Below the pieces are notes generated by a model. That model was not told where the DNA came from and did not search any database. It was given only the letters and a program-made list of their open reading frames with translations. The position numbers and the translations under genes are program-made. A DNA stretch of 64,000 nucleotides, taken from positions 62,001-126,000 of the IMG/VR virus record IMGVR_UViG_3300009104_001210; one strand, 5' to 3'. Shown piece by piece: positions 5,379 through 52,397 of this stretch; within the stretch, counting starts at the first letter, position 1, and every line of letters begins with the position of its first letter.

Positions 5379-5573
5379 TTGATATACGTAAAAGTCCGTA
5401 AAGGACAATCAATAGAAAGAGCACTTTCTATTTTCAAGAAAAAAGTAAAAGATAGTAAAATTCTCTATGAATTAAAAGAAAGAGAATATTATACTAAACC
5501 TTCTCAGCTTAGAAAAGAAAAAAAGGCTAGAGCAAGGGCAAGAATTAGAAAAATTCAGTCGCAAACTGACTGA
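5379..5573 (+). CDS. rpsU: 30S ribosomal protein bS21 (phage-encoded)
   Basis: VKVRKGQSIERALSIFKKK...LKEREYYTKPSQLRKEKK matches the bS21 pattern; TTG start with SD GAGGT. Confidence 0.9.
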   Translation: MIYVKVRKGQSIERALSIFKKKVKDSKILYELKEREYYTKPSQLRKEKKARARARIRKIQSQTD

Positions 5574-30951: not shown

Positions 30952-33900
30952 TGGCATTAGTAGATATGAAATCAAATTTAGCTATTGGTGTTGGTTCAAA
31001 AGAATCACCTCAATCTTTTGCTGATGGTCATTCAGCGTATACTGTTACGGGACAAAGAAAATTTGAAACTGCAATAAGACATGATGTTGAAAAAGATGTA
31101 TTTACTTCTTATAATCGTAAAGGTGATGAATTAAAATGGATGTTTAATGATGCTTTTTCAGGACAAGGTAGTATGTTAGTTCAAGCAAAAGAGTTTGACT
31201 TACGTGCATATTATGATAGAGCACTTAAAAATACAGATGTTTTAGGTGCAAGAAATAATAATAGATTAGGTTTTGACGAACCATTTATTCTTAAACCAAT
31301 TGGTGATAGATGGGGACCTGATACTTGGTCTGTAGATGAAGGAATGGTTAGAGCAGGTATACTTACACAATCAGCAAGAACTGTAGCCGATGTTCAAAGA
31401 ATAGGTAAGTTTTTATTGACACCAAGAGGTGTTGGTTTTATAGCGAAACAAGAGGTTTTACAAATGCTGAATGCAGGTGGTTCAGTTTCAATGTCTACAT
31501 TAAAAAGTAGAATAAATCAAGCATTAGGAAAAGATGTTTTAAGACAAGATTCAGTACCACAAAGATTTTCAGCAGGTAGAGATATATTTAAGAGTTCTTT
31601 TGCTAAAGTTGATGCAAAAACTGGTCATTATATGGGTGGTGGTCCAACCGTACAAAATTGGGAAGGTAGTGATATTAGAACTTGGAGAGGGCCAGAATCT
31701 ATTATAGCATCACTTCCTATAGGAGCACATTTTGTAAGGCATAAAACACCAGTAGGATCTCCTACTATTAAATTAATTAACAATGTTGGTAACTTTATTG
31801 TTGATGCAGGTGGTGGAGTATTATCTTTATTGGATGGTATTCAAGTTGCTTGGCCTCATATTAGTATGAATCCAGATTTTAGAGCAGGTAGTTTACTAAC
31901 AGGATTAGGTAATATAGCAGCAAATGTTGGTAGAGGTATGGGTGATATCTTTCCTAATATTTTTGAGAATGCTAAAACAGGGGTAGGAAATATTGCTGAT
32001 GCATTAGGTAACGCATTTTCAAATGTAACTTTACCAAAAGTAAGTTTGGGTAGGGTTTCTGATTCACTATCAGGATTATTTCCAGGATTAATAGGTGTAC
32101 AAGGAATAGGAACTCCTGATTTTAGTGGAATGATGAGTTTGTTGGGTGGATTATCAAATAAATTAGGTAATTTAGTAAGTAGTCTACCTATACCAAGTAT
32201 AAGTTTACCGCCATTACCAAGTTTACCATCTTTACCAAAAATAGATTTACCAGATTTAGGGAATCCATTTTCAGGTATATCAAGTTTTGTAAGTGGGATT
32301 AAATTACCAGGAATAAAATTTTCAGGAAGAGGTGGATTAGGATTAGGTAGTTTAAAAGGAGTATTACCTGCTATTAATTTTGGATTAAAAATTAAAGGTG
32401 GTAATTTAGGATTTGATTTATCTGCTTTTGATGATTTTAAATTTGGTTTTAATAAAGGATTAAAAGGATTAATTGATTTACCTGGATTTGATCTTAATAT
32501 GGTAACAGCAAGAGGAATTCCACAACCAGGCGTACCTCTTTATGCAAGAAAAGGAGCATCAGGTCGTTATGGTGAAGATATAGCAAGTTTGAAAGAAGGT
32601 GTAGGTGGATCTCAACATTTAAATAGAGACGAAATAGAAGCTTATGGAGTACCAAAGTTATGGTATACAACTGCAAAAGATATTGGAGACAATAGAGGTT
32701 CATTAGCAAATCTTTATGATGCGGATTTTCCATATACAAAATTGATATTAGGTAAAACAACTAAATCCGTATTATGGACTTTTGGCATTGGCTTTTCAGA
32801 CAAGATAAAGACAGACAATAAAATAACTGGAATACCATATGCAATAGGTGCTGGGTTTGCTGGTGGTAGGTTGGATCCAATAAATACCCCCAACTTTCCA
32901 TTAAATCAGACAAAAGTATATAGGGATATTATTACACCCGAATTTCCTACAAATGTTCAAGATTCAAGTGGAACTAAAAATAAGATACAAAAATATGAAA
33001 TGTTATCTTATGGACAATTAGGTGGTGAAGCAGAGGGTTATGGTAAGAAGAATGAAAAAAATTCCGCTGATATTACAAGAGGAATAGGTTCTTATGGTAA
33101 AGCTGCTAGATTTATTCCAGCACCGGCAAAGGATGGAAAACCTCTTACTGATGTAGTGGCATCTGATGGTACAGGTGTATATAAAACAACGTTACAAGAT
33201 ACAATAAATTTACATCCATATGGTGGTTCAATTGCTTCTCAACACGTTAATAATGAAAATAGCGACTTTGTTCCATTTAAGTTTAGAGATATGGTAAATG
33301 GTAAGTGGATTATATTTAGAGCAATTATTGAGAGTGTTTCAGATACTTCATCCCCACAATTTGCAGAAGAAAGATACATTGGTAGACCAGATAAAGTTTA
33401 TACATATCAAGGTTCTGATAGAAATGTTAATATTACTTTTAAAGTTATGCCAAAATCTGCACAAGAATTAGTTACTCTTTGGGAAAAGTTAAATTATTTG
33501 AGAGGATTAACTTATCCTACAGTAAAAAATAATCGTATGATAGCACCATTTTTTAGTTTGACATTAGGTGATATGTTTGATAGTCAACCAATGATATTTC
33601 AGAGTTTAAATTTTAGTATTGATCAATCATCTTTATGGGAAATTAGACCAGGTTTAAGATTACCAAAATTAATACAATGTTCTGCAGATATGAGAATAAT
33701 TGAGAAAACTTTACCAACTTCTATAGGTAAACATTATGATTTAGATTGGTTACATGATGGACAGAATACAATTGGTGGAGATCCAATGACTGATCCTACT
33801 TTAGTAGAACCCGATAGAAAAAAATATATAGATTTATGGAAAGAGTTGGGAATGAATGGAATGAGTGGTGAAGTTATGGATAATTTAATGGCAGCAGCAG

Positions 33901-34010
33901 AAACGGTAGAGGCTTTACAAGAAGCGATAGATGCTGCTAAAAGTGTAGATGCTGGTATTGGCGCAGGAGCTTTGGATGCACCAAATATAAATTTTAGTAT
34001 CAGTAAGTAG
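30951..34010 (+). CDS. Baseplate protein with C-terminal tube-like domain
   Basis: C-terminal FRAIIESVSD...YIGRPDKVYTYQGSDRNVNITFKV resembles baseplate tube-initiator domains; central low-complexity L/P/G region. Confidence 0.6.
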   Translation: MALVDMKSNLAIGVGSKESPQSFADGHSAYTVTGQRKFETAIRHDVEKDVFTSYNRKGDELKWMFNDAFSGQGSMLVQAKEFDLRAYYDRALKNTDVLGARNNNRLGFDEPFILKPIGDRWGPDTWSVDEGMVRAGILTQSARTVADVQRIGKFLLTPRGVGFIAKQEVLQMLNAGGSVSMSTLKSRINQALGKDVLRQDSVPQRFSAGRDIFKSSFAKVDAKTGHYMGGGPTVQNWEGSDIRTWRGPESIIASLPIGAHFVRHKTPVGSPTIKLINNVGNFIVDAGGGVLSLLDGIQVAWPHISMNPDFRAGSLLTGLGNIAANVGRGMGDIFPNIFENAKTGVGNIADALGNAFSNVTLPKVSLGRVSDSLSGLFPGLIGVQGIGTPDFSGMMSLLGGLSNKLGNLVSSLPIPSISLPPLPSLPSLPKIDLPDLGNPFSGISSFVSGIKLPGIKFSGRGGLGLGSLKGVLPAINFGLKIKGGNLGFDLSAFDDFKFGFNKGLKGLIDLPGFDLNMVTARGIPQPGVPLYARKGASGRYGEDIASLKEGVGGSQHLNRDEIEAYGVPKLWYTTAKDIGDNRGSLANLYDADFPYTKLILGKTTKSVLWTFGIGFSDKIKTDNKITGIPYAIGAGFAGGRLDPINTPNFPLNQTKVYRDIITPEFPTNVQDSSGTKNKIQKYEMLSYGQLGGEAEGYGKKNEKNSADITRGIGSYGKAARFIPAPAKDGKPLTDVVASDGTGVYKTTLQDTINLHPYGGSIASQHVNNENSDFVPFKFRDMVNGKWIIFRAIIESVSDTSSPQFAEERYIGRPDKVYTYQGSDRNVNITFKVMPKSAQELVTLWEKLNYLRGLTYPTVKNNRMIAPFFSLTLGDMFDSQPMIFQSLNFSIDQSSLWEIRPGLRLPKLIQCSADMRIIEKTLPTSIGKHYDLDWLHDGQNTIGGDPMTDPTLVEPDRKKYIDLWKELGMNGMSGEVMDNLMAAAETVEALQEAIDAAKSVDAGIGAGALDAPNINFSISK

Positions 34011-34319: not shown

Positions 34320-37154
34320 ATGATTCAGTTAAAACCAATTGATTCAGAAGTTCAAAAAACTTTATTAGAAAAAATAAAAATGTCTGGTAAACAAGGTAAG
34401 GCTGTAACCGAACCATTATCAGGTGAAAAGTCTGATTATCTATCAGCAAGAACCGTTTGGGCAAGAATGATTGCACTTAGTACTTCTACAAATAATCCAA
34501 GAACACCAATAGTAATTTCAGCAGGAGAAGAATCTGTAGAACCAATAGAATCTACAACTGATCCTATAACTGGCGGAACTGCACAATTTTCTCCAATTAA
34601 AGGTAGAATTCGTGGAACTTTTGATGAAGTTTATGATAGAACAAATTTACATAGACCAATAGCTGGTTTAAAAAGTATATCTACAGGTATTGAAGGTGCA
34701 TATAAAGCAGTAAGAAAAGCTGATATAAGATGGATATGTTGGGATTTTGATACATTAGAAAGGTTGACACCATTCTTTTTATCACCTGGAGTATCAGTAG
34801 CATTAGAGTTTGGTTGGATGTGGCCAGGTCACATACCACAAGAATTTATTTATGATAATTGGGCTGAAATGGATGCAAGAAAAATAGGTTCTTTAAGTGA
34901 TGTTGTTAGAAAACAAGGTCAAGGACACCAAGATATGGTGTATGGAATTGTTAAAAACTTTTCGTGGACAGGAAGAGATGATGGTGGATTTGATTGTTCT
35001 ACTCAAATAATATCACCATCTATGAATGTTTTTAGTACACCATTGGGAGATTCAGAAAAAGCACCAACTTTTGAAATTCCAGAAGACTTAAAAAATCAAA
35101 TAAGAGGTAAAAGAGAATGGTATCGGTCACGTAAAGGTGAACAAGAAGTAATTTTAAGTGATGAAGACATGATGGCAAGACTTAAAGAAGTAGGGCTTGG
35201 GGGCGATGAAGACAATAGTTATATAGAAAATGTTCCACCAAGATTATTATTTGATAATTTTAAACAAATGTTATTAGATCTTAGGTATGGTGATCAAATG
35301 GAATCTTATATAAATACTATTATATGTTATAAAACTGATCTTAATGTTTCTAAACCACATATAGGACCATATGTTTCTTATGGTTGGTTTGAAGATAATA
35401 TTTTAAATACGTGTGTTGGAAAAGTTGTTGATGGAGATAAATTAAGTTATTCTGTACGATCAGTAGATTTTTTTACTGAAAAGGGTGATGGAGAAAAATG
35501 GTATAGAAGTACTACGATAAGTAATGATACAACAAGTCTTATTACTATAGATGCAGAAAAAGTTATTATTCCAGGACAGTTTCCATATTCAACAAATTTT
35601 GAGAAAGAACTTAATAGAATGGAAGGTAAAGATGAAGGTAAGGATCGTAAAGATAAAGACTACGAATTTGAAACTCATTGGAAACGAAAAGTATGGAAAA
35701 AAATAGAAGAAAAGGTAAGGGAACTACCAGCATTTGCAGTAAAAGCGGAAGGTGAAGAAAAAGATGAAGATACTTTCGAAAGTTTTTCAGAAAGAGGGAA
35801 AAAATTACTTAAAGCAACTAAAGGTGAGGATAAAGATGGAGATTTTAAATATGGTAAAGAAAAGGGATATTTAAGAAATTTACTTATTCACGCAGATTTA
35901 ATTAGTGAATCTATGAAAACTAGCAATACCTTTGAAGGTGGATTAAAAAATTTATTAGCTAATATAAGTGATGCTTGTGGTGGAATTTGGGATTTTGAGT
36001 TAGCAACTAGCGAAGACGGTAGTACGGTTAGGGTTATAGAAAAAGGTTCGCCAGAAAAACCTGTAAGAGCTTTACTTGATAATCAGAGTATAAATTTGGA
36101 AACAGGTAATGTTAAAGATAAATATAATAATAAAGGTTTAATGATATTTCCAACTTGGCAAACTAATTCTATAGTATTTAATCAAAATATGGTTACTAAA
36201 TTACCATCACAGATGGCAACAGTAGCAATGTATGGAAGAAATTTATCTGCTAAAGAAGCTTCGAATGAAGAAATGTCAGGAGATAAAGCAGCAAGGACTT
36301 TAGGAAAGTTATTTAATTCTAAATTAAATAATGTAGAAGATGTTATTAATAAAAATATTGAGAGAATTTTAGGAAATACTGAAATTAATAAGTTTGGATT
36401 AAATGAACTAAGTGGGTATCATGGTCTGACAAAAGAAATAGATGTGTCAGCCGAAAAAGGAATAGTAATAGATGCAGCAGAAATTATCAAACAATATACA
36501 GAAAAACAAATTATGGATATTTTAAATGATGGTATTGATTATGATAAAGAAAAAGACCCAACCGTTGAAGGAAAAAGAGAAAAAGACTCAACAGCATTAG
36601 ATTATACATTTTTATATGATAGAAATGGTAAAATAAGAAAACATTATAAAGATGCTTTATTACATTTTTTACATCAAAGCCCAGGTTCTATAAAACAAAC
36701 AGAAGATATTTTAACACCAATTGAGTTTGAAGTAACTATTGACGGTACAGGAGGAATTTTTCCAGGAGAGGCATTTTCAAGTACATATATTCCAAAAAGA
36801 TATAGAGATGCAACAGTTTTTCAAATTATGGATATAAATCACAGAGTAGATGGTAGTGGTTGGAAAACTACATTAAGAGGTTTAATGAGAATTGATTATG
36901 GTTTGGGGGAAAAAAAACCAATGAGTGAAATGCTTGAAGAAATATATGCAGATAAAAAGGGTGATTCAAAAGCACCACCATATTTATCATTTGCGGAATA
37001 TTTAACAGCTAATGTAGGAAAGATATCTAAATATAAGATAACTCCTGAAAAACAAAAAGAAATTGATGCATCAGAGCAGTCTGATCAACCTGAACCTTCC
37101 CCTGGCCTCAACAAAAATAACAGACCTATGGGCGGTGGTGGCAGGAACGTTTAA
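34320..37154 (+). CDS. Baseplate hub-like protein
   Basis: 944 aa; GIVKNFSWT..DGGFDCST and C-terminal EVTIDGTGGIFPGEAF...FQIMDINHRVDGSGWKTTL motifs. Confidence 0.6.
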   Translation: MIQLKPIDSEVQKTLLEKIKMSGKQGKAVTEPLSGEKSDYLSARTVWARMIALSTSTNNPRTPIVISAGEESVEPIESTTDPITGGTAQFSPIKGRIRGTFDEVYDRTNLHRPIAGLKSISTGIEGAYKAVRKADIRWICWDFDTLERLTPFFLSPGVSVALEFGWMWPGHIPQEFIYDNWAEMDARKIGSLSDVVRKQGQGHQDMVYGIVKNFSWTGRDDGGFDCSTQIISPSMNVFSTPLGDSEKAPTFEIPEDLKNQIRGKREWYRSRKGEQEVILSDEDMMARLKEVGLGGDEDNSYIENVPPRLLFDNFKQMLLDLRYGDQMESYINTIICYKTDLNVSKPHIGPYVSYGWFEDNILNTCVGKVVDGDKLSYSVRSVDFFTEKGDGEKWYRSTTISNDTTSLITIDAEKVIIPGQFPYSTNFEKELNRMEGKDEGKDRKDKDYEFETHWKRKVWKKIEEKVRELPAFAVKAEGEEKDEDTFESFSERGKKLLKATKGEDKDGDFKYGKEKGYLRNLLIHADLISESMKTSNTFEGGLKNLLANISDACGGIWDFELATSEDGSTVRVIEKGSPEKPVRALLDNQSINLETGNVKDKYNNKGLMIFPTWQTNSIVFNQNMVTKLPSQMATVAMYGRNLSAKEASNEEMSGDKAARTLGKLFNSKLNNVEDVINKNIERILGNTEINKFGLNELSGYHGLTKEIDVSAEKGIVIDAAEIIKQYTEKQIMDILNDGIDYDKEKDPTVEGKREKDSTALDYTFLYDRNGKIRKHYKDALLHFLHQSPGSIKQTEDILTPIEFEVTIDGTGGIFPGEAFSSTYIPKRYRDATVFQIMDINHRVDGSGWKTTLRGLMRIDYGLGEKKPMSEMLEEIYADKKGDSKAPPYLSFAEYLTANVGKISKYKITPEKQKEIDASEQSDQPEPSPGLNKNNRPMGGGGRNV

Positions 37155-37744: not shown

Positions 37745-39022
37745 TTGAAATTTATAGAAAATAGCATGGAATTCAATGCTTTCTTGCAAGACTATGAGGA
37801 AGCAAATCAAATCATAGCACTTCCCGTTCCCGTTGATTACAAAAAACATCCTGTAGAAACAAAATTATCTTTTGTTCTTTTTTTAATTGATGGAAAACCT
37901 TTCACACTTACATTTAATCATACAGATGCAAAAAATCTTCAGTTTGAAGATTTACGTATAATAAATAATAAAAACAAACCAATATACACTCTTGATAAAA
38001 AACAAGCATATCATCTTACACATTTAGATAATTTCATTGATGTAAATTTACTTAACTATTGGAATACAGGTGAGAAAACTAATTTAGATTTATATCTTAA
38101 TGATACAATTCGAGATTATCATATGAAATATTATGAGAAAGAAGATATAAACGCATCTATTCCTATAATGAAATTCACATATCATTTATATAAGATAGCA
38201 ATGGAAATGCAGGTTATTCTTTCAAAATATGACACTTCTGACATTTTGACATATAATGATGAAATGTTTGATAACTTTATACATATAGAAAAAAATGGTT
38301 TACAAACAACTGATGGTATGGTATATTCAGAGTATAATCCATTCACATCTACAGGTCGTCCATCAAATAGATTTGGTGGAGTTAATTTCGCAGCATTAAA
38401 TAAGAGTGATCGTAGTAGAGAAAAATTTATTAGTAGATTTGGTAGTGAGGGTAAATTGGTTGAGTTTGATTATGATGCATATCACTTGAGATTAATAGCA
38501 GATAAAGTAGAATATGAATTCCCCGAAGGTTCAGTACATGAGCATATGGCAAAATATTATAATTGTGATTATGAAGAATCAAAAAGGAGATCATTTCAGT
38601 ATCTTTATGGTGGAATACCGATAGAAGTGTGGCAACTAAATCCATTTTTTTCAAGTGTATATGACTATGTAAATAATCTTTGGAATATATATAAAGAAGA
38701 ACATTTTATCAAATCAGATATTTATAGTAGAGAAATAAAGGGAAGTAATTTTAACGCCAACAAATTGTTTAATTATTACATTCAATTATTGGAAACTGAA
38801 ACAAATGTGGTAGTTATAAAAAAGGTTAGACAATTAATGAATAAATATAAAAGTAAGTTTATATTGTACAGTTACGATTCATTTTTATTTGATATGCATA
38901 TAGAAGATGGATTACCATTTTTAAAAGAATTGAAAGATGTTTTGGAAAATAATAAGTTTCCAACAAAAGTTGCTTGGGGTAAAAACTATGATGACCTTGT
39001 AGATATTACGGAGAAATTTTAA
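37745..39022 (+). CDS. Compact family A DNA polymerase-like protein
   Basis: TSTGRPSN, motif A EFDYDAYHLRLI, motif B SKRRSFQYLYGG, motif C YSYDSFLFD; TTG start with SD AAGGT; no 5'-3' exonuclease domain. Confidence 0.8.
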   Translation: MKFIENSMEFNAFLQDYEEANQIIALPVPVDYKKHPVETKLSFVLFLIDGKPFTLTFNHTDAKNLQFEDLRIINNKNKPIYTLDKKQAYHLTHLDNFIDVNLLNYWNTGEKTNLDLYLNDTIRDYHMKYYEKEDINASIPIMKFTYHLYKIAMEMQVILSKYDTSDILTYNDEMFDNFIHIEKNGLQTTDGMVYSEYNPFTSTGRPSNRFGGVNFAALNKSDRSREKFISRFGSEGKLVEFDYDAYHLRLIADKVEYEFPEGSVHEHMAKYYNCDYEESKRRSFQYLYGGIPIEVWQLNPFFSSVYDYVNNLWNIYKEEHFIKSDIYSREIKGSNFNANKLFNYYIQLLETETNVVVIKKVRQLMNKYKSKFILYSYDSFLFDMHIEDGLPFLKELKDVLENNKFPTKVAWGKNYDDLVDITEKF

Positions 39023-41163
39023 TGTTTGAATGGAAAACTTTTTTCAACGATTTTGCAGAAGAGTACTATTCAGTACCATACTTAGATAAGAAAGAGCACA
39101 TATACGCTTTACAAAACTATCTTATAGCAAAAGGTATGTTAGTAGAGGATGTTGATTATGCCATTAAAACTCTTTTGGGTGAAGAAACACCTGTAAATTC
39201 TTGGAGTGATAGAAAAACACATAAAGAAGAAGAAAGAAAAAGAGTAGCCGAAGAGAAACCTAAGTACGCTAAGGCATCGGGTGGAAAATATTATGTGAAA
39301 AATAAAGAAACAGGAAATGTTTATTCAGTTGTTAAACCTAATCCCGAAAAACATGATCCAATTAGCAGAGAGAAAGCAGAAAAAGAAGTAGAGAAAGATG
39401 GTGGTGGAAAAGAAGATAAAGCTCAAAGTTTCGCCAGAGAAAAATTTAAAAAGGCTTTAGATCATCAAATGAGTACAATAGAATTTGAGCCAGAAAGTGA
39501 TAAAGAAGTTTTTCAAAAAGTTATTGATAAAGTAAGTAATCAAGATGCCAATTTTTCAGACGAGGAAAAGAAAATTGCTGGAAAATATATTGCTAAAAGT
39601 GATTCAGATAAAACAGCAAAACTTTATATTGCTAAAGTTGGTCCGCAAACTTTTGATGATAAAGCTAGACGTGGACAAGTTAATTATGCAAAAAGTAAGG
39701 CTGGAAGACAATATATAGATAAATTACAAAAAGTACTTAATCTTCCAACAACTGCTGCTCAAGCTAAGAAAACAGATGCGGGTAGAGTGGCTTCTAAAAT
39801 TAGAACAAAAGATATATCACCCACAGATATAAATAAAGAAATTGAAGTTGGTGTATCTAGAGTAAAGGATTCCAAAGGTAATATTACAGCAGTTAAGTTT
39901 GGTAATAAAGAACATAAATTAGCATCTGTACCTGATAAACAAAAATTAAAACAAACTTTTATGGATAAAGGTATGTCTGACGAACAGGCAGAACTTAGAG
40001 CTAAAAAAGTTAGACGTTCAATTAGAAAACACAATGAATATTTAGTAGATTTAACACAAACTCTTGATAAAGAGTCGGGTGAATTTGTACCTCGAAAAAA
40101 CTTTAAAGTAGCAAGTATGATAAAAGGTGCTGATCCATCAACTGAAGAGGGTAGACAGAAAATTCTTGAAGAATATCCTAAAAAAATACATCGTATTTTT
40201 AAAGACATTGTGGCAAAAAGTCCTGGTGGAATAACAGAAGATGAAAAAAGAGCTTTAAATACATTAAGAGATTTAAATTCTAATCTTTCAACTGAAGAGT
40301 ATGAGAAAGAATGTCTAAATGTTATACATACTATTTTAAGGACTCCTTCACTTGCTTCTGGTGGTGCAGATTTGGCTGAAAGTATAACAGGTTTGATACA
40401 AACTAAAAAAGGACATGAGATTTATTTTCCAAGTGATGTTACTTATAAAGTAGGTGATATGATTTCTTTGGGTGATTTAGGTGATTTAAATCCTACTGAT
40501 CCTGATTATTATAATAAAGTTGCTGACGCTGCATCTTCTATTATAGTAACAGTTGAAGCTGAAGGACCTGCTAGTGTTAAAGTGGGTGCAGGAGCAGCTA
40601 GTTCTGCTGAAGAAAAAGTAAGAATGACAGAGTATGAGAATCCAAAAACAAGGTCAGCGTTAAGTGGTTTAGTATCAACTCATAAGTTAATGTTTGATAA
40701 ACCTCAAGATTTAAATAAAGCAGATGAGAATATTCAGAAAGCAAGAGATCATGCTCTATCTATTGGTATTACACAAGAAGAGCTTGATAAGATAGATGAA
40801 AAGGCAAAAGCACAATCAGCAAAATGGAAAGAACTTTGGAAAGGAAGAGCAAAGAAAGGTACTGAAGATTGGTCAGATGAAGATTGGGATAAAATGGAAC
40901 AAACTTTGGTTAGATTTGCACAATCTCACTTATTAATTCAAGATATTAATAATAAGGATATGATATACCAAAAATTTACAAACTATAGGTATAATGATAA
41001 AGTAAGTGGAACAGAAGTGGATAGAACTGATGGTGTTAATTGTTTAGGATCTATTAAAGCTGCTATGAATATGGGATTTACTTGGAGTGAAGGTGGTGGA
41101 GTGAGACCGCAGAATACTTTTTCAAGTAGAATTGGTAATACCTGTAAGGATGTGAAAAAATAA
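39022..41163 (+). CDS. Large hypothetical protein
   Basis: 713 aa; Lys/Glu-rich and modular. Confidence 0.7.
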   Translation: MFEWKTFFNDFAEEYYSVPYLDKKEHIYALQNYLIAKGMLVEDVDYAIKTLLGEETPVNSWSDRKTHKEEERKRVAEEKPKYAKASGGKYYVKNKETGNVYSVVKPNPEKHDPISREKAEKEVEKDGGGKEDKAQSFAREKFKKALDHQMSTIEFEPESDKEVFQKVIDKVSNQDANFSDEEKKIAGKYIAKSDSDKTAKLYIAKVGPQTFDDKARRGQVNYAKSKAGRQYIDKLQKVLNLPTTAAQAKKTDAGRVASKIRTKDISPTDINKEIEVGVSRVKDSKGNITAVKFGNKEHKLASVPDKQKLKQTFMDKGMSDEQAELRAKKVRRSIRKHNEYLVDLTQTLDKESGEFVPRKNFKVASMIKGADPSTEEGRQKILEEYPKKIHRIFKDIVAKSPGGITEDEKRALNTLRDLNSNLSTEEYEKECLNVIHTILRTPSLASGGADLAESITGLIQTKKGHEIYFPSDVTYKVGDMISLGDLGDLNPTDPDYYNKVADAASSIIVTVEAEGPASVKVGAGAASSAEEKVRMTEYENPKTRSALSGLVSTHKLMFDKPQDLNKADENIQKARDHALSIGITQEELDKIDEKAKAQSAKWKELWKGRAKKGTEDWSDEDWDKMEQTLVRFAQSHLLIQDINNKDMIYQKFTNYRYNDKVSGTEVDRTDGVNCLGSIKAAMNMGFTWSEGGGVRPQNTFSSRIGNTCKDVKK

Positions 41164-44863: not shown

Positions 44864-46229
44864 TACATTACATACGTATGGAAATGCCTTTCAATCAAAA
44901 ACTATTTCTGCATTTTTAACTGATAGTTTATTTTTACAAACTATTATAGAGATTGTTAAGCCAGAGTATTTTGAATCGGAAGCAAATAAATGGCTAGTTA
45001 CAGAAATACATAAATATTTTATTAATTATAAAACTTCACCTACATTAGAAGCATTGAAAATTGAAGTTAATAGTGTAGAGAATGAAGTTTTTCGTCTTAC
45101 TATAATAGAAGCACTTAAAGAAGCTTGGAAACACAAAGATTCTACAGATTTAAAATATGTTCAAGAAAAAACATTAGATTTTTGTAAGAATCAAGTTCTA
45201 AAATCTGCTATTATGGAATCTGTAAGTCTATTAGAAAACCAAAACTATGATGGTATTAAAACTGTTATAGATAGTGCTATGAAGGCAGGAACTGCTGTTG
45301 ATATAGGACATGAATATAATATAGGTATAGAAGAAAGATTAACTAAGTCTACAAGAACTACTATAAAAACGCCATGGGATGTGATAAATGATATAATGGA
45401 TGGTGGTCTTGGAGAAGGTGAGTTGGGGGTGGTTGTTGCGCCTGCAGGTATTGGTAAAACATGGTTATTGCAAAGTATTGCTGCAGGCGCAATTAAAAAA
45501 GGATTTACAGTAGTACATTATACTTTAGAATTAAATGAAAATTATGTTGGGTTGAGGTATGATACAGTTCTTAGTGGTATAACTACTCAAAATATAAAAT
45601 ATCATAAAGATGAAGTAAAGAAAATAATTGAAAGTGTCCCAGGTAAGATGGTTATTAAATATTATCCAACACGGGCAGCAACAGTTAATACAATTTCAGC
45701 ACATTTAAAACAATTAGAATTAAAAGATATAAAACCTGATTTAGTTATAGTAGATTATGCAGATATATTGAGAGATGTTAGTGGTATGAGAGAAGTTAGA
45801 CACCAATTAGGTAGTATTTATGAAGATTTAAGAGGGTTAGCGGGCGAGTTTGAAATTCCAGTGTGGACTGCATCTCAGGCTAATCGTTCAGCACTTGAAG
45901 AAGAAGTTATTGAAGCAACAAAAGTTGCTGAAGCATATAGTAAAGTTATGATTGCTGATTTTGTGTTAAGTATTAGTAGACAAGCACAAGATAAAATAAG
46001 TCATACTGCTAGGTGTCATATTATTAAGAATAGATTTGGTGTTGATGGTTTAACTTATCCAATGGGTATGAATACTAACATTGGTAAGATAGATATTTAT
46101 GAAAGCACGAGTAAACCAGGCAAAGAACAACAAGGTAAAATGGATAATAGAGAAGAGTTTAGAAGAAAATTGTTAGCTAGTAAGTATAACGACATGAAGG
46201 ATGAAAAAACTTCAGAAGGATTTGAATAA
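44853..46229 (+). CDS. dnaB: Replicative DNA helicase (DnaB/gp41-like)
   Basis: Walker A APAGIGKT, HYTLELNE, IVDYADIL, WTASQANR, IKNRFG. Confidence 0.92.
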   Translation: MESNTLHTYGNAFQSKTISAFLTDSLFLQTIIEIVKPEYFESEANKWLVTEIHKYFINYKTSPTLEALKIEVNSVENEVFRLTIIEALKEAWKHKDSTDLKYVQEKTLDFCKNQVLKSAIMESVSLLENQNYDGIKTVIDSAMKAGTAVDIGHEYNIGIEERLTKSTRTTIKTPWDVINDIMDGGLGEGELGVVVAPAGIGKTWLLQSIAAGAIKKGFTVVHYTLELNENYVGLRYDTVLSGITTQNIKYHKDEVKKIIESVPGKMVIKYYPTRAATVNTISAHLKQLELKDIKPDLVIVDYADILRDVSGMREVRHQLGSIYEDLRGLAGEFEIPVWTASQANRSALEEEVIEATKVAEAYSKVMIADFVLSISRQAQDKISHTARCHIIKNRFGVDGLTYPMGMNTNIGKIDIYESTSKPGKEQQGKMDNREEFRRKLLASKYNDMKDEKTSEGFE

Positions 46230-46315
46230 AGTCATTAAGAATACAATATATATTATACTTACTTATAGTGGGAATTAAAAAACCAGAAGGTATTAGATTA
46301 TAGGAGATTGGTAAA

Positions 46316-48307
46316 TTGGATAAGTTTTTTTTGTCTGAAAATTTTGTAAGTAAATACAAAAGAAAAAAACCACCATTCGGTTTCAACGGTTTAGGTGAAT
46401 TAGTTTATATGAGAACTTACTCTCGTATTAAAAAAAACGGTAAAAACGAGAGATGGTGGGAAACAGTTCGTAGGGTTGTAGAAGGTACTTACTCTATGCA
46501 AAAGGCATGGATAGATCAACACCAACTCGGTTGGAATGCTTGGCAGGCTCAAGCATCAGCACAAGAAATGTACGATAGAATTTTTAATATGAAATTCCTA
46601 CCACCTGGCCGAGGTCTTTGGGCTATGGGAACACCAATTACAGAAGAAAAGAATTTATATGCAGCACTAAACAATTGTGCATTCGTATCCACTTCCACAC
46701 TTAAAGAAGATTATTCAAAACCATTTTGTTTTCTAATGGATGCCTCTATGTTAGGTGTTGGTGTTGGTTTTGACACTAAAGGTGCAGGTGAAATTGTTAT
46801 TAAAGGTGTAAACCGTGATAGAAATGAAGAAATATTTATGATACCTGATACAAGAGAAGGTTGGGTAGAATCTTTAAAGTTATTATTAGAGAGTTATTTT
46901 CATGGAACAGGGCCTATTACGTTTGACTATAATCAAATTAGAGATGAAGGTGAACCAATCAAAGGTTTTGGTGGTGTCTCAAGTGGTCATGAACCATTAA
47001 AAGAAATACATGAAGATATTCAGAATGTTTTAGAAGACAATACAGGCGAACCAATTTCAGTTACAACAATAGTAGATATAATGAATTTGATTGGTAAATG
47101 TGTTGTAGCAGGTAATGTTCGTAGAACTGCTGAGATCGTTTTTGGTGATCCAAAAAACGAAGAATATTTAAATTTAAAGAACTATAAAGTGAATCCACAT
47201 AGAGAAATGTATGGGTGGACTTCTAATAATTCAGTATTTGCTGAACTTGGTATGGATTATACAGATATCTGTAAAAGAATTGTAGACAACGGTGAACCAG
47301 GACTTGCTTGGTTACAAAATATGAGACACTTTTCTCGTATGAAAAATGGTGGAGATGACAAAGACCATAGGGTAGCAGGTGGAAATCCTTGTTTAGAACA
47401 ATCATTAGAAAGTTATGAATTATGTTGTTTAGTAGAAACATTTCCAAACAATCATGAAAATTTAGAGGATTATAAGAGGACACTTAAATATGCTTATTTG
47501 TATGCCAAGACAGTAACACTTGGTAAAACTCATTGGAGTGAAACTAATCGTGTTATGTTAAGAAACAGACGTATTGGATGTTCAGTTAGTGGTGTTGCAC
47601 AATTTATTACAAATAGAGGTTTAGAAGAATTAAGAAATTGGTTGGAGAATGGTTATGATACTATTCAAGATTGGGATTGTGTGTATTCTGATTGGTTAGC
47701 AGTACCAAAGTCAATTAAAACTACTTCAGTTAAGCCAAGTGGTACAGTTTCATTGTTAGCAGGAGCGACACCAGGACTTCATTACCCTGAGAGTCGTTTT
47801 TATATTCGTAGGATAAGACTATCCAAACATTCAGAATTAGTAACACCATTAAAAAAGGCAGGATATAAAATAGAACCCGCATTTGGTTCAGAAGATTCTA
47901 CAGTTGTTGTAGAAGTGCCAGTTGATGTAGGAAAGGGTATCAGAACTGCCGCTGAATTGTCTATTTGGGAACAATTTAGTTTAGCAGCATTCATGCAACG
48001 CCATTGGGCTGACAATCAAGTAAGTTGTACCGCAACATTTGATCCAGATACAGAAGCTGAAGAACTACCATATGTGTTGAATTATTTTCAATACAGATTA
48101 AAAGGTATATCATTATTGCCACGACACGACTTAGGTGCGTATAAACAAATGCCTTATGAAGCAATAGATAAAAAAGAGTATAATAAGCAAGTAAAACAAC
48201 TTAATAAACTAACTTTCGGTGTAATCAAAAACGAAGAGGCAGAAATAGACAAATTCTGCAATAATGATGTATGTGAAATACCAGGGGAAACTTTAGAAAA
48301 AGCTTGA
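46316..48307 (+). CDS. nrdJ: Class II (adenosylcobalamin-dependent, monomeric RTPR-type) ribonucleotide reductase
   Basis: RTYSR, PPGRGLW, NNCAFVST, GGNPCLEQSL, CCLVE, TSVKPSGTVS and C-terminal CNNDVC. Confidence 0.92.
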   Translation: MDKFFLSENFVSKYKRKKPPFGFNGLGELVYMRTYSRIKKNGKNERWWETVRRVVEGTYSMQKAWIDQHQLGWNAWQAQASAQEMYDRIFNMKFLPPGRGLWAMGTPITEEKNLYAALNNCAFVSTSTLKEDYSKPFCFLMDASMLGVGVGFDTKGAGEIVIKGVNRDRNEEIFMIPDTREGWVESLKLLLESYFHGTGPITFDYNQIRDEGEPIKGFGGVSSGHEPLKEIHEDIQNVLEDNTGEPISVTTIVDIMNLIGKCVVAGNVRRTAEIVFGDPKNEEYLNLKNYKVNPHREMYGWTSNNSVFAELGMDYTDICKRIVDNGEPGLAWLQNMRHFSRMKNGGDDKDHRVAGGNPCLEQSLESYELCCLVETFPNNHENLEDYKRTLKYAYLYAKTVTLGKTHWSETNRVMLRNRRIGCSVSGVAQFITNRGLEELRNWLENGYDTIQDWDCVYSDWLAVPKSIKTTSVKPSGTVSLLAGATPGLHYPESRFYIRRIRLSKHSELVTPLKKAGYKIEPAFGSEDSTVVVEVPVDVGKGIRTAAELSIWEQFSLAAFMQRHWADNQVSCTATFDPDTEAEELPYVLNYFQYRLKGISLLPRHDLGAYKQMPYEAIDKKEYNKQVKQLNKLTFGVIKNEEAEIDKFCNNDVCEIPGETLEKA

Positions 48308-48333
48308 CAAGTACCTGGTTTTTGTCGTATATT
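48304..48333 (+). promoter_or_regulatory. Sigma70-like promoter upstream of the family B polymerase
   Basis: TTGACA (48304-48309), N18, TATATT (48328-48333). Confidence 0.7.
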
Positions 48334-48360
48334 CAGATATCAAATTGAAGAGGTATAGTC

Positions 48361-50862
48361 ATATATCAAAATATCTTTTATCAGATAAGTAAAAGTAGAA
48401 TACATATTTGGGATGATAAAAAAGGATATGCAGTTTATCCATTTAAACCATATGCTTATATAAAAGACTCAAAAGGTACGTTTACTTCTTTATATGGTGA
48501 TAAGGTAAGAAGAATTGCTAAATCACAAATAGAAGAATATGATACTTCTTTTGAATCTGATGTGTTAGCAGAAACAAGGTTTTTAGTAGATAACTATACA
48601 GATTCAGATGATGTATCAGAGGGTCATAGAGTTATGTTTTTTGATATTGAAGTAGAGGTTACAGAAGGTTTCCCTTCAGTAGAAAAAGCTGACAATGCAA
48701 TTACTTCTATTGCTTTATATGATAAATTAACTAAAGAATATCATTGTTATGTACTTGACGCTGAAAATGCAGTTAATAGTGAAAATTTTGATAATGCTAC
48801 AGTAATAAAGTTTAAAGAAGAGAGAGATTTATTAAATAAATTTTATCAAAAATATCTTGAGATATCACCAACAATTATTAGTGGTTGGAATAGTGATAGA
48901 TTTGACATTCCTTATTTATATAATCGTTCTCGGAGGTTATTAGGTGAGGATGTTGCTAAATGTTTATCACCAATAGGTATTGTAGACTATAATAAACATA
49001 GAGGTGCTTATAAAATAGCAGGTGTATCTAGCTTAGATTATCTTGAACTATATAAAAAACTTACTTTTGGTGAAAGGTCTTCATATAGATTAGATGATAT
49101 TGGAAATTATGAAGTAGGTATAAAAAAAGTTTCATATGATGGTACATTGGATGATTTATATTATAATAATAGGAATAAGTTTGTAGAGTATAATATAAAT
49201 GACGTTGTTATTCTTGAAAAACTTGATGAGAAGTTAGATTTTATTGGTATTGCTAGAGCTATTTGTCATTTGGGTCATGTTCCATATGAAGATGTATATT
49301 ATTCATCACGATTTTTAGAAGGTGCTATTCTTGTATATCTTAAAAAACTTGATATTGTTGCGCCAGATAAGAAAAAAGTAAATAAAGAATTAATGAACAA
49401 TGGTGATAAGTTTTCAGGAGCATATGTACAAGAACCAATAAAAGGTAGACATGAGTGGATTTATGATTTAGATATTACTTCAATGTATCCATCAATTATT
49501 ATGACATTGAATATTTCTCCTGAAACAAAACTTGGAAGGTTAACAGGTTGGAATTCAGAAGAATTTGTTAAAGGAGTAGATAAAACATATACTATAGAAG
49601 ATGATTCAGGAAAAGAAAGTGCTAAACTAACTACAGCAGAGTTTAAGAACTTTTTAAAAAATAATAATGTATCTGTATCTACTAATGGTGTGTTATATAC
49701 ACAAGATAAAAGAGGGTTAATTCCAACTTTGTTGGAAAAATGGTTTGATGATAGAGTAGAATTTAGAAAATTAGCAAAGAAGTTCGCTGAAGAGGGTGAT
49801 AAAGAGAAATATGCATACTTTGATAGACGACAGTATATTCAAAAGGTTGTTCTAAATTCATTGTATGGTGTGTTGGGTTTACCTGTGTTTCGTTTTTATG
49901 ACTTAGATAATGCAGAAGCAACAACGACAACGGGTGTTGAGTTAATTAAATATACTAAGAAGATAGCTAATTATTATTATAATTCTGTTTTGGAAGATTC
50001 GGAAGATCATTGTATATACATTGATACAGATTCAGTTTTTTATTCTGCTGTTTCTATGATTCAAAAGAAATATCCACACATTAATATTAAAGATGAAAAT
50101 CTAATGATGGATAAGATTTTAGATATTGCCTCAGAGGTTCAAGAATATTTAAATAGTTCATATGATTTATTTGCTAAAAAGTTTCTTAATGTAGATAAAC
50201 ATAGATTTGAGATTAAGCAGGAATTGATTGCTAGAAGTGGGTTATTTGTTACAAAGAAAAGATATGGATTGAAAGTTGTTAATGATAATGGTGTTAAGAT
50301 AAATAAACTTCATGTAAAAGGTTTAGATATTGTTCGTTCAAGTTTTCCAATAGCTATGAAAGAATGTTTAACAAAAGTATTAGAAGATATATTAGCAAAT
50401 GTACCTCAGAATAAGATTAATGAGTTTATTCTTAATTTTAAGAAATCTATGAAGTTGAAAAACTATGATACTATTGCAATGCCAACTTCAGTTAAAAATG
50501 TTAAAAAATATGTTCAGAGGGGTGATGGTAGATTGTTAGCTAAAAAGGGTGCACCTGTTCATGTTAAATCAGCAATAAATTATAATAACTTTTTATTGTC
50601 AAGTAAACTTGAAGCAAAGTATCCTTTAATTGGAAACGGTGAAAAGATTAAGTGGACTTATCTAAAAGACAATCCATTTAAATTTGAGACTTTATGTTAT
50701 AAAGGACATGAGGATCCTCAACAAGTGTTAGATTATATAAAAGAGTATATTGATACCGATAAGATATATAAGCAAGCACTTAGTAAAAAAATAGTAATGT
50801 TATATGATGCATTAAAATGGGAAGAACCAAATGATGATTTTGGTTTTAATAAATTCTTTTAA
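48361..50862 (+). CDS. Family B DNA polymerase (gp43-like); probable ATA start
   Basis: FFDIEVE exonuclease motif, DITSMYPS, KVVLNSLYG, YIDTDS, KKRY; frame extends 67 codons upstream of ORF-track start 48562 to ATA TAT CAA AAT preceded by SD GAGGT. Confidence 0.93.
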   Translation: MYQNIFYQISKSRIHIWDDKKGYAVYPFKPYAYIKDSKGTFTSLYGDKVRRIAKSQIEEYDTSFESDVLAETRFLVDNYTDSDDVSEGHRVMFFDIEVEVTEGFPSVEKADNAITSIALYDKLTKEYHCYVLDAENAVNSENFDNATVIKFKEERDLLNKFYQKYLEISPTIISGWNSDRFDIPYLYNRSRRLLGEDVAKCLSPIGIVDYNKHRGAYKIAGVSSLDYLELYKKLTFGERSSYRLDDIGNYEVGIKKVSYDGTLDDLYYNNRNKFVEYNINDVVILEKLDEKLDFIGIARAICHLGHVPYEDVYYSSRFLEGAILVYLKKLDIVAPDKKKVNKELMNNGDKFSGAYVQEPIKGRHEWIYDLDITSMYPSIIMTLNISPETKLGRLTGWNSEEFVKGVDKTYTIEDDSGKESAKLTTAEFKNFLKNNNVSVSTNGVLYTQDKRGLIPTLLEKWFDDRVEFRKLAKKFAEEGDKEKYAYFDRRQYIQKVVLNSLYGVLGLPVFRFYDLDNAEATTTTGVELIKYTKKIANYYYNSVLEDSEDHCIYIDTDSVFYSAVSMIQKKYPHINIKDENLMMDKILDIASEVQEYLNSSYDLFAKKFLNVDKHRFEIKQELIARSGLFVTKKRYGLKVVNDNGVKINKLHVKGLDIVRSSFPIAMKECLTKVLEDILANVPQNKINEFILNFKKSMKLKNYDTIAMPTSVKNVKKYVQRGDGRLLAKKGAPVHVKSAINYNNFLLSSKLEAKYPLIGNGEKIKWTYLKDNPFKFETLCYKGHEDPQQVLDYIKEYIDTDKIYKQALSKKIVMLYDALKWEEPNDDFGFNKFF

Positions 50863-50913
50863 TTTGGAGAAATAATATGATACTTATATATATGTATATA
50901 AAGGAGTTACAAA

Positions 50914-51645
50914 ATGGATAAACAAACGTTGATGGGATTCATCAATAGGTTTTATTTAGGTGGGCAAACTCAATCAGCACCTGTAAAATCAACAAAAGAC
51001 ACACTTAGTTGTGCATTTATCAACTCAGCAAAAAGTTGTGTTGGTGATATTGTTTTAGCTAAGAATGGAATTGGTGATTATGAAATGGGGCTGTATGAGA
51101 TTCAAGACTTAATTAAACTAATTAGTGTATTGGATGGTGATATGGATGTTGATGTTAAAACTGTAGGTGAAGTAGCATCACAGTTAGTCCTTTCACAAAA
51201 AAATACTAAAGCAAGAATAAATTATGGTCTTGCTAGATTGGATGTAGTTCAGAAGAAACCAGATTTATCAAATGTTCCTGAGTTCACATTAGAACTTAAA
51301 CTTGATAAGAAGTTCATTAGCACATTTATTTCAGGTAAAAGTGCGTTAAGTGAAGTTGCAACATTTGCTGTATTAGCAGATGGTAAAGAAGCAAAGGTTG
51401 TAATAGGTTATAGTTCTACAACACAATCTAATAAAGTTACAATCCCTGTAGAATGTAGTAAAGTAGATAGTTTTGAAGAGGCTGTATTATTTGATGCAGA
51501 TACTTTCAAAGAGATATTACTTGCTAACAGAGATTGTGAATCTTCAACTCTTTACATTTCAGATAAAGGGTTAGCTAAAGTTAATTTCAAGGTAGATAAT
51601 TTCGATTCTACATACGTACTAGTTGCAAAAACAACAGTAGACTAA
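50914..51645 (+). CDS. Sliding clamp (gp45-like)
   Basis: 243 aa, beta-rich; directly after the polymerase, with the clamp loader nearby; SD AAGGAG. Confidence 0.7.
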   Translation: MDKQTLMGFINRFYLGGQTQSAPVKSTKDTLSCAFINSAKSCVGDIVLAKNGIGDYEMGLYEIQDLIKLISVLDGDMDVDVKTVGEVASQLVLSQKNTKARINYGLARLDVVQKKPDLSNVPEFTLELKLDKKFISTFISGKSALSEVATFAVLADGKEAKVVIGYSSTTQSNKVTIPVECSKVDSFEEAVLFDADTFKEILLANRDCESSTLYISDKGLAKVNFKVDNFDSTYVLVAKTTVD

Positions 51646-52397
51646 TGGAAAATACTGTAGATAAATCAAAAGTTTATCTACAAGAGATAGACAAAAAGAC
51701 TGCGAAGGAAATGATTGTAAAACATCATTATTCGCATAGAGGTTCTTCTTGTAGATACGCTATAGGAATATATTATAAGTCAGATAATCCTCATCCTTTT
51801 TTTAAGGATACGAGTGAGGAAAAACTCATTGGGTGTATGACTTATGGTTATCCTGTAGGAAGAACTGTATTGGGATCTATGTTTAATGAAAACGTTAAAT
51901 TAGAAACTAATAATATTTTGGAATTGACAAGATTATTTATACATGATGGTTATGGTAAAAATATTGAATCATATTGTATTTCTCAATCATTTAAATGGTT
52001 GAAAAAACATGATGAAAATGTTAAAACATTAATAAGTTATGCAGATCCTGATGTATTACATTTAGGTGGTATTTATAAAGCTACTAATTGGTTGTATCAG
52101 GGTGCAGGATTAAATTTAATGCCAAATTATTCAATATCTTTAACAAAGGATCCATATGAATGGATACATAGTAGAACTGTTTCATCAAGATTTGGTAGTC
52201 ATAATATAATAAAGTTAAAAGAAGCAATTGGACATACGTTTTGGAGAAGAAGAGAACCTGAAAAACATAGGTACATTTACTTTTTGGGTAGTAAAAAAGA
52301 GAATAAAAAGTTTATGAAGAATTTGAAGTATGAAACTAAACCGTATCCTACAAATGCAGAAGAGTATTTACCGCCAATAGAAGAACATAAAGTATGA
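51645..52397 (+). CDS. Mom-like (GNAT-fold) DNA adenine modification protein, copy 1
   Basis: IVKHHYSHR, LIGCMTYG, LELTRLF, ESYCISQSFKWL, LISYADP..HLGGIYKATNWLYQG. Confidence 0.78.
   Translation: MENTVDKSKVYLQEIDKKTAKEMIVKHHYSHRGSSCRYAIGIYYKSDNPHPFFKDTSEEKLIGCMTYGYPVGRTVLGSMFNENVKLETNNILELTRLFIHDGYGKNIESYCISQSFKWLKKHDENVKTLISYADPDVLHLGGIYKATNWLYQGAGLNLMPNYSISLTKDPYEWIHSRTVSSRFGSHNIIKLKEAIGHTFWRRREPEKHRYIYFLGSKKENKKFMKNLKYETKPYPTNAEEYLPPIEEHKV

What the first reader, a model, noticed from the sequence alone, without database searches (positions are those of the whole stretch)
48346..48561. Family B DNA polymerase appears to initiate at ATA (AUA)
Seen: upstream of the ORF-track start (48562) the frame stays open back to TGA at 48346. 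It contains no in-frame ATG, GTG or TTG, yet encodes a polymerase-like N-terminus (xYQNIFYQ...IHIWDDKKGY..YPFKPYAY). ATA at 48361 lies 6 nt after SD GAGGT and 27 nt after a TTGACA-N18-TATATT promoter. PolA, RNR and bS21 use TTG. Known: non-canonical starts (e.g. AUU of infC) lower expression and make it IF3-sensitive. Inference: deliberate translational throttling of the replicase, possibly linked to phage bS21-modified initiation.
Basis: partly seen in the sequence, partly recalled or inferred. Interest (0 to 1): 0.65.

Follow-up and report, generated by a model that had tools for sequence, protein, structure and literature searches.

The report
Phage DNA polymerase starting at AUA
The replicative DNA polymerase gene of this uncultured marine phage really does begin with the very rare start codon AUA, a trait kept for a long time and re-invented (as AUA, AUU or AUC) many times among its relatives, always together with a strong, well-placed ribosome-binding site, which points to tuned rather than accidental translation of the replicase.

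Summary
The PolB frame is open from TGA 48346. It has no ATG, GTG or TTG before GTG 48562, and the 67 codons in between encode a conserved polymerase N-terminus. ATA 48361 lies 6 nt after AAGAGGT and 27 nt after a TTGACA-N18-TATATT promoter.

It is not a base-calling error. The same ATA is found in 3 near-identical contigs and about 15 contigs at 80% protein identity, from other metagenome assemblies.

In 118 relatives the codon at this exact position is ATG (about half), TTG, ATA, ATT or ATC, followed by conserved YQN. An in-frame stop usually lies 1-7 codons upstream. On a 101-row PolB tree the start codon changed at least 23 times.

All 15 distinct AUH leaders carry an SD core, 6 nt upstream in 13 of them. 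None of the 42 distinct ATG leaders has a strong SD at that distance (independent contrasts 8-9 to 0, p about 0.004). PolB is the only AUH-start gene in this 216-kb genome.

Best reading: true AUA initiation in which the SD makes up for the weak codon and holds polymerase synthesis at a set level, as in infC, pcnB, ccpN and Deinococcus dnaA.

The suggested bS21 link is not supported, because bS21 also occurs in relatives whose PolB starts with ATG. There is no direct protein or ribosome evidence.

The parts
48304..48309 (+). -35 hexamer TTGACA of the PolB promoter. It overlaps the TGA stop (48305-48307) of the upstream RNR gene.
   Evidence: 11 of 12 match. TTGAC is invariant in the 9-sequence alignment A2 and present in more distant leaders.
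48328..48333 (+). -10 hexamer TATATT, within the conserved cgTATATTc, 18 nt after the -35 hexamer.
   Evidence: 'cgtatatt' recurs upstream of PolB in most relatives whatever their start codon.
48346..48348 (+). In-frame TGA that closes the PolB frame 5 codons before the start.
48348..48354 (+). Shine-Dalgarno AAGAGGT, 6 nt before ATA. Duplex with the 16S 3' end is -7.1 kcal/mol, in the top 13% of genes in this genome.
48361..48363 (+). ATA (AUA), the inferred initiation codon of PolB.
   Evidence: It aligns with ATG, TTG, ATT or ATC of 118 relatives. It is conserved in a 13-14 row clade.
48361..50862 (+). Family B DNA polymerase (T4 gp43/RB69-like), 833 aa plus stop. It includes the 67 codons that ORF callers miss.
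   Evidence: Pfam DNA_pol_B 3.4e-35 and DNA_pol_B_exo1 4.6e-22. RB69 and T4 polymerase structures match at 4e-75. Codons 2-67 show 16-20 synonymous against 19-22 non-synonymous differences to the 80% relatives.
48562..48564 (+). GTG, the first canonical start in the frame. This is the start an ORF caller picks and is not the real start.
   Evidence: There is no SD upstream (0.4 kcal/mol). It lies inside the conserved FESDV motif.
46316..48307 (+). Upstream gene: class II (B12-dependent) ribonucleotide reductase, TTG start with GGAG 9 nt upstream.
5379..5570 (+). Phage bS21 gene (63 aa), TTG start, AAGAGGT 5 nt upstream. No specific link was found.

Best explanation
PolB is translated from AUA 48361. 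Host fMet-tRNA most likely reads it as a near-cognate codon with a third-position mismatch. The mRNA most likely comes from a conserved sigma-70-type promoter and has a leader of about 20 nt, rich in A and U. A strong SD (AAGAGGT) exactly 6 nt upstream makes up for the weak codon.

The net effect is an initiation rate held at a set, probably modest, level for the replicase. The family reaches a comparable rate in other members by pairing ATG with a weak or badly spaced SD (12-16 nt).

Shown: the position of the start, its conservation, its recurrence, and the coupling between start codon and SD. Inferred: decoding by fMet-tRNA, the transcription start, and that the purpose is to limit or tune polymerase output.
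For: (1) No canonical start lies in the 72 open codons upstream of GTG 48562, and the N-terminus is conserved.

(2) Mel-JY01 starts MYKNI with ATG at the aligned codon.

(3) Across 118 IMG/VR relatives the aligned codon is ATG, TTG, ATA, ATT or ATC, followed by YQN. In-frame stops lie 1-21 codons upstream, with no canonical start in between except in five loci (L103; L104, L112, L120 and L125) that have one 3-4 codons upstream.

(4) ATA is present in 3 near-identical contigs and about 15 diverged contigs from different metagenome datasets, which excludes a miscall.

(5) The tree of 101 PolB sequences needs at least 23 start-codon changes: ATA at least 7, ATT at least 5. The window's ATA clade keeps ATA across a path length of 0.3, with one reversion to ATG that comes with a replaced leader.

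(6) All 15 distinct AUH leaders have an SD of -5 kcal/mol or stronger, with a core at 6 nt in 13 of 15. None of 42 distinct ATG leaders does. Independent contrasts give 8-9 concordant, 0 discordant, p about 0.004.

(7) Sisters L082 (ATG, GAGGT at 12 nt) and L070/L080 (ATA, GAGGT at 6 nt) show both features switching together.

(8) PolB is the only AUH-start gene in the genome.

(9) Precedent from the literature: conserved AUU and AUA starts with extended SDs give about 10-30% of AUG output in S. aureus (PMC13009471). dnaA starts at ATC and infC at ATA in Deinococcus (PMC2830850).
Against: There is no direct evidence: no N-terminal peptide, ribosome profile or transcript 5' end.

In one optimised in-vitro system AUA mRNA performed like AUG mRNA between 20 and 40 C (PMC5499595). 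AUA may therefore throttle little when the SD is strong.

Part of the ATG-without-SD signal is a lineage effect. The 46-48% clade lacks SDs on all neighbouring genes.

The contrasts use a PolB tree, while leaders appear to recombine, so independence is approximate.

A second in-frame ATA at 48355 cannot be formally excluded as the start.
Confidence: 0.75

Rival explanations
1. The AUA start is genuine but has no regulatory meaning. It is a nearly neutral variant, tolerated because the SD is strong, and the family simply drifts among equivalent leader cassettes spread by recombination.
For: The start codon changes often (at least 23 changes). Whole leaders are exchanged between diverged phages. 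In vitro, AUA can equal AUG in an optimised initiation region (PMC5499595).
Against: A single A-to-G transition would give ATG. Yet ATA persisted while 43% of nearby third positions changed. ATG is never found with a strong SD at 4-10 nt in 42 distinct leaders, which suggests that combination is selected against. AUH is confined to this one gene in the genome.
Confidence: 0.2
2. The AUH start makes PolB translation a sensor of host state, through the IF3-to-ribosome ratio, ppGpp or nutrient status. Phage bS21-modified ribosomes might also play a part.
For: IF3 discriminates against AUH starts, and ppGpp or nutrient limitation depresses non-AUG mRNAs (PMC5499595). ccpN AUA efficiency depends on the medium in S. 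aureus (PMC13009471). The phage encodes bS21.
Against: Nothing here tests it. bS21 is also present in relatives whose PolB starts with ATG (L134 and L135). bS21 sits next to the major head gene, which hints at a different timing from a gene driven by a sigma-70-type promoter. No phage IF3 was looked for, and the five phage tRNAs (Glu, Tyr, Ala, Cys, Thr) include no initiator tRNA.
Confidence: 0.15
3. Sequencing or assembly error: the true codon is ATG.
For: One base (A against G) separates ATA from ATG. Raw reads could not be inspected.
Against: The same ATA occurs in L005, L018 and L036 and in about 15 diverged contigs from other metagenome datasets. Further ATA, ATT and ATC cases occur in other clades.
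Confidence: 0.01
4. Translation starts elsewhere: at GTG 48562, giving a truncated polymerase, or at another near-cognate codon (ATA 48355, ATC 48373, ATA 48385).
For: GTG 48562 is the first canonical start. Cyanophage gp43 N-termini are two residues longer, so their Met aligns with ATA 48355.
Against: GTG 48562 has no SD and lies inside the conserved FESDV motif. Codons 2-67 are under coding constraint. ATA 48355 directly abuts the SD with 0 nt spacing. Close relatives have a stop immediately before the codon equivalent to 48361. Downstream AUH codons have no SD.
Confidence: 0.05

Closest known systems
infC (IF3) AUU/AUA start and pcnB AUU start in bacteria
   Same: A conserved non-canonical AUH initiation codon on one specific gene, kept across lineages and used to limit or tune translation (PMC5499595, PMC2830850).
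   Different: infC is autoregulatory because its product, IF3, is the discriminator. Here the product is a DNA polymerase, so no such loop is evident. Here the codon also varies within the family (ATG, TTG, ATA, ATT, ATC) instead of being nearly fixed.
S. aureus/B. subtilis ccpN (AUA) and cvfC1 (AUU) with extended SD
   Same: The same architecture: a weak AUH codon together with a strong, correctly spaced SD, both conserved. Measured output is about 10-30% of AUG (PMC13009471).
   Different: Those are cellular regulators in Firmicutes and were validated by Ribo-Ret and reporters. This is a phage replicase known only from metagenomes, with comparative evidence only.
Deinococcus dnaA initiating at ATC
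   Same: A replication protein whose synthesis starts at an AUH codon, found because annotation missed a conserved N-terminus (PMC2830850).
   Different: It is a cellular replication initiator, not a polymerase, and was proven by N-terminal proteomics. No SD co-variation was reported there.
T4/RB69 gp43 autogenous translational repression
   Same: The same enzyme family and the same apparent need to restrain translation of the replicative polymerase at its ribosome-binding site (PMC3014915).
   Different: T4 uses an RNA hairpin operator bound by the polymerase, with an AUG start. Here the leader is only about 20 nt, has no significant or covarying structure, and the restraint would lie in the codon itself.

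Membership tests
Non-canonical (AUU/AUA/AUC) start-codon attenuation, infC/pcnB/ccpN type | The true N-terminus is encoded from an AUH codon, with no canonical start available. | tested here: met
   This is comparative evidence, not proteomic.
Non-canonical (AUU/AUA/AUC) start-codon attenuation, infC/pcnB/ccpN type | The non-canonical codon is phylogenetically conserved or recurrent. | tested here: met
   The clade of 13-14 rows keeps ATA. ATA needs at least 7 changes and ATT at least 5 on the tree.
Non-canonical (AUU/AUA/AUC) start-codon attenuation, infC/pcnB/ccpN type | A strong or extended SD at proper spacing directs selection of the weak codon. | tested here: met
   AAGAGGT lies 6 nt upstream. 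All 15 distinct AUH leaders have an SD of -5 kcal/mol or stronger.
Non-canonical (AUU/AUA/AUC) start-codon attenuation, infC/pcnB/ccpN type | Output is lower than with AUG and sensitive to IF3. | not testable with these tools
   This needs reporters or ribosome profiling. Only the inverse coupling of SD and start codon bears on it.
T4 gp43-type RNA operator (autogenous repression) | A hairpin operator upstream of and overlapping the ribosome-binding site. | tested here: not met
   The fold z-score is -0.88. The consensus hairpin is -2.9 kcal/mol with 0 covarying pairs and is broken in L070. There is no Rfam match.
T4 gp43-type RNA operator (autogenous repression) | The polymerase binds its own mRNA. 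| not testable with these tools
Family B DNA polymerase, T4/RB69 gp43-like | Exonuclease and polymerase domains with their catalytic motifs. | tested here: met
   Pfam PF03104 and PF00136 match. RB69 structure 1clq matches at 3.9e-75. FDIE and YIDTDS are visible in the translation.
Phage bS21-dependent initiation | The trait co-occurs with phage bS21 and is absent without it. | tested here: not met
   bS21 is present in records whose PolB starts with ATG. Most relatives are fragments, so absence cannot be scored.

The most novel reading that the evidence does not exclude
In a large clade of uncultured marine T4-like phages, the promoter, leader and start-codon unit of the replicase gene behaves as an exchangeable tuning cassette. 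AUH codons with a 6-nt SD, TTG codons, and ATG codons with a distant SD are alternative settings swapped by recombination. The AUH setting would make polymerase synthesis depend on host initiation fidelity (IF3 or ppGpp state), so that the phage ties replication to host physiology.
Probability: 0.2. Interest if true: 0.75.

Novelty: new member of a known kind. Interest (0 to 1): 0.55.

Why it matters
AUA, AUU and AUC starts are very rare in bacteria and phages, and few are conserved.

Here one essential phage gene uses them in roughly a quarter of about 120 sampled relatives, with a clean inverse coupling to SD placement. That is a natural titration series for how start codon and SD jointly set initiation rate. 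It also suggests that replicase dosage is under tight selection in these phages.

There is a practical side. Standard gene callers accept only ATG, GTG and TTG, so they truncate this polymerase by 67 residues. Relatives with AUH starts will be cut in the same way. This affects annotations, protein databases, and phylogenies or structure models built on PolB as a marker.

Tried and rejected
Independent assemblies served instead.
- bS21 co-occurrence: the first five relatives were fragments without bS21. Larger records showed bS21 alongside ATG-start PolB, so the specific link was dropped.
- Phage initiator or Ile tRNA that might read AUA: none. The only tRNAs are Glu, Tyr, Ala, Cys and Thr.
- Structured operator or known cis-RNA: fold not significant, no covariation, no Rfam family.
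- Other AUH-start genes in the genome: every other SD-preceded AUH sits 1-2 codons before an ATG that shares the SD, or lies in a spurious antisense ORF.
- Family A polymerase: absent.
- The conserved 'ATGGGG' in ATG-type leaders as a mini-uORF: rejected, because the ATG is replaced by ATA, TAG, GAG or AAG in relatives. The conserved part is a G-rich SD-like element 12-16 nt from the start.
- Promoter counts alone are not above shuffles. Support for the promoter comes from conservation.
- The large protein searches, structure prediction and complex prediction were not needed and were not run.

Full report
**What is in the sequence.** The window is bases 62001-126000 of a 216,422-bp IMG/VR virus record with 31% G+C.
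- The family B polymerase frame is closed by TGA at 48346-48348 and then stays open to TAA at 50860-50862.
- The first in-frame ATG, GTG or TTG is GTG 48562.
- The 72 codons before it read RGIV-IYQNIFYQISKSRIHIWDDKKGYAVYPFKPYAY...FESD.
- AAGAGGT lies at 48348-48354 and ATA at 48361, 6 nt downstream.
- TTGACA (48304) - 18 nt - TATATT (48328-48333) lies 27 nt before ATA. It is the best sigma-70-like match in 46000-51200 (11 of 12).

**The gene and its setting.**
- The 833-aa product carries the DNA_pol_B_exo1 and DNA_pol_B domains. It matches the RB69 and T4 polymerase structures at E about 1e-75.
- Its neighbours form a T4-like replication module: a gp32-like SSB, a UvsX/RecA homologue, a 5'-3' exonuclease, a DnaB-like helicase and a class II RNR. 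Further upstream lie myovirus structural genes, the major head protein and the tail sheath.
- The nearest isolate is Microcystis phage Mel-JY01, at 47% identity. Cyanophage gp43 proteins are about 32% identical.

**Where translation starts.**
- Mel-JY01's annotated PolB begins ATG-TAT-AAA-AAT-ATC (MYKNI). This aligns codon for codon with the window's ATA-TAT-CAA-AAT-ATC.
- Two scans of IMG/VR gave 118 further loci in which the match reaches residue 1.
- In every one, the codon aligned with 48361 is ATG, TTG, ATA, ATT or ATC, and it is followed by a conserved (Y/F)Q. An in-frame stop lies 1-21 codons upstream, often directly before the start codon. Five loci (L103; L104, L112, L120 and L125) have a canonical start 3-4 codons upstream; the others have none in between.
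- This fixes the N-terminus of the family at this codon.
- GTG 48562 has no SD (0.4 kcal/mol) and sits inside the conserved FESDV motif.
- Codons 2-67 differ from the 80%-identity relatives by 16-20 synonymous and 19-22 non-synonymous codon changes. That is the pattern of a translated, constrained segment.

**Not an error.**
- The same leader and ATA occur in L005, L018 and L036, which are 100% identical to the window at the protein level.
- They also occur in about 15 contigs at about 80% protein identity, assembled from other metagenome datasets.

**Evolutionary pattern.**
- On a 39-row tree, the window belongs to a fully supported clade of 14 rows, 12 with ATA and 2 with ATG. ATA arose once there and was kept over a path length of about 0.3 substitutions per site. 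The two nested ATG rows (L017, L020) have a different leader downstream of the -10 element.
- Third codon positions nearby are only 55-64% identical between the window and these relatives, yet the A at the third position of the start codon is unchanged.
- On a 101-row tree the start codon needs at least 23 changes: ATA at least 7, ATT at least 5, TTG at least 13.
- L095 (ATA) and L096 (ATT) are sister rows with the same first 15 residues, so ATA and ATT interchange.
- L123 uses ATC.

**Coupling to the SD.** I scored the duplex between positions -16 to -4 and the 16S 3' end.

| Start codon | Distinct leaders | SD strength |
|---|---|---|
| ATA | 9 | all -5 kcal/mol or stronger, mean -6.8 |
| ATT | 5 | all -5 kcal/mol or stronger, mean -8.3 |
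| ATC | 1 | -11.1 kcal/mol |
| TTG | 18 | 67% at -5 kcal/mol or stronger |
| ATG | 42 | none at -5 kcal/mol or stronger, mean -2.1 |

- In AUH leaders the core (GGAG, GAGGT, AAGGAG or AAGGAGGT) lies exactly 6 nt from the start in 13 of 15 cases.
- In ATG leaders of the same clades, an SD-like element is absent or lies 12-16 nt away.
- Phylogenetically independent pairs that differ in AUH status differ in SD strength in the expected direction in 8-9 cases, in the opposite direction in 0, and not at all in 3-4. The sign test gives p about 0.004.
- The sisters L082 (ATG, GAGGT at 12 nt) and L070/L080 (ATA, GAGGT at 6 nt) show both features switching together.
- A caveat applies. The 46-48% clade lacks SDs on all neighbouring genes too, so its SD-less ATG is a lineage trait, not compensation. 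Within that clade, however, the two ATT loci carry AAGGAGGT.

**Specificity.**
- In the window's own genome, SDs are used moderately. Of ATG genes, 44% reach -5 kcal/mol or stronger, against 13% of random positions. PolB's SD is in the top 13%.
- PolB is the only internal gene with a long open stretch before its first canonical start.
- It is also the only gene whose SD-preceded AUH is not simply adjacent to an ATG.
- So the trait belongs to this gene, not to a generally relaxed start-codon usage.

**Mechanism.** The best-supported reading is genuine initiation at AUA, made possible by a strong, optimally spaced SD on a short A/U-rich leader.
- The family alternates between a weak codon with a good SD and a strong codon with a poor SD. 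This points to stabilising selection on the initiation rate of the replicase.
- Published work supports the architecture. In S. aureus, conserved AUU and AUA starts all carry extended SDs and give about 10-30% of the AUG output (PMC13009471). Deinococcus dnaA starts at ATC and its infC at ATA (PMC2830850). infC and pcnB are the classical AUU cases (PMC5499595).
- T4 and RB69 restrain the same enzyme by a hairpin operator (PMC3014915). No comparable structure is detectable here.
- Decoding by fMet-tRNA, the transcription start near 48340, and the quantitative effect are all inferred.
- One in-vitro study found AUA equal to AUG in an optimised context (PMC5499595). The size of any throttling is therefore open.

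**The bS21 idea.**
- The phage does encode bS21 (window 5379-5570, TTG start, AAGAGGT 5 nt upstream).
- bS21 is also present in the records of L110 and L064, whose PolB starts with ATG.
- Most other relatives are fragments in which absence means nothing.
- Nothing therefore ties bS21 specifically to the AUH start.

**Verdict.**
- It is a new member of a known kind, namely AUH start with strong SD.
- It is of moderate interest for three reasons. The trait sits on a phage replicase. It recurs so often. And it causes systematic truncation of this marker gene by gene callers.

Noticed in passing
L073:2930-3030 compared with L010:1752-1852 and L068:2930-3030: The promoter-to-ATA leader of L073 is 54 of 60 identical to that of the window's clade. 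Yet its PolB is only about 61% identical to the window's, and its sister L068 has a different leader with TTG. The leader and start-codon cassette appears to move between diverged phages by recombination.
   Followed up: partly
L044:2960-3003 and L045:75-117: These loci have an ATT start preceded by a full AAGGAGGT, 4 nt upstream. The neighbouring genes in the same loci have almost no SD (mean -1.4 kcal/mol). In an SD-poor, possibly Bacteroidota-type setting, such an SD could itself be a regulatory signal (compare rpsU in Flavobacterium, PMC9976891).
   Followed up: no
window 51645-52397 (+): This ORF matches the Mom protein family (PF25680, E 1.5e-47), a DNA-modification function. It lies two genes downstream of PolB.
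   Followed up: no
window 48304-48309: The TGA stop of the class II RNR gene (48305-48307) lies inside the -35 hexamer of the PolB promoter. TTG 46316 is the first canonical start of the RNR frame, with GGAG 9 nt upstream.
   Followed up: partly
window 5379-5570 (+); L134 and L135: The phage bS21 gene uses a TTG start and the same AAGAGGT SD as PolB. It sits just upstream of the major head gene. Homologues are present in related records whose PolB starts with ATG.
   Followed up: partly
ATG-type leaders, for example L071:2960-3003 and L082:2960-3003: A conserved G-rich element (GGGGA or GAGGT) lies 12-16 nt before the ATG, and TAA lies directly before the ATG. Whether this distant SD-like element works as a standby or weak SD is unknown.
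   Followed up: no
L050 (PolB frame); L037 and L061 (one contig): The L050 PolB frame stops after 346 aa. In contig 3300037991_002238 the PolB match comes in two pieces (residues 1-524 and 528-826). Either could be a frameshift, an insertion or an assembly problem.
   Followed up: no
G000:C1:166246-167375 (outside the window): A cluster of five tRNA genes (Glu-TTC, Tyr-GTA, Ala-TGC, Cys-GCA, Thr-TGT). There is no initiator or Ile tRNA.
   Followed up: yes
window 37745-39022, 39022-41163, 30951-34010 and 34320-37154: Several large ORFs (425 to 1019 aa) have no PHROG match, and 37745-39022 also has no Pfam match. 37745 may start at TTG or at an ATG 12 codons downstream.
   Followed up: no
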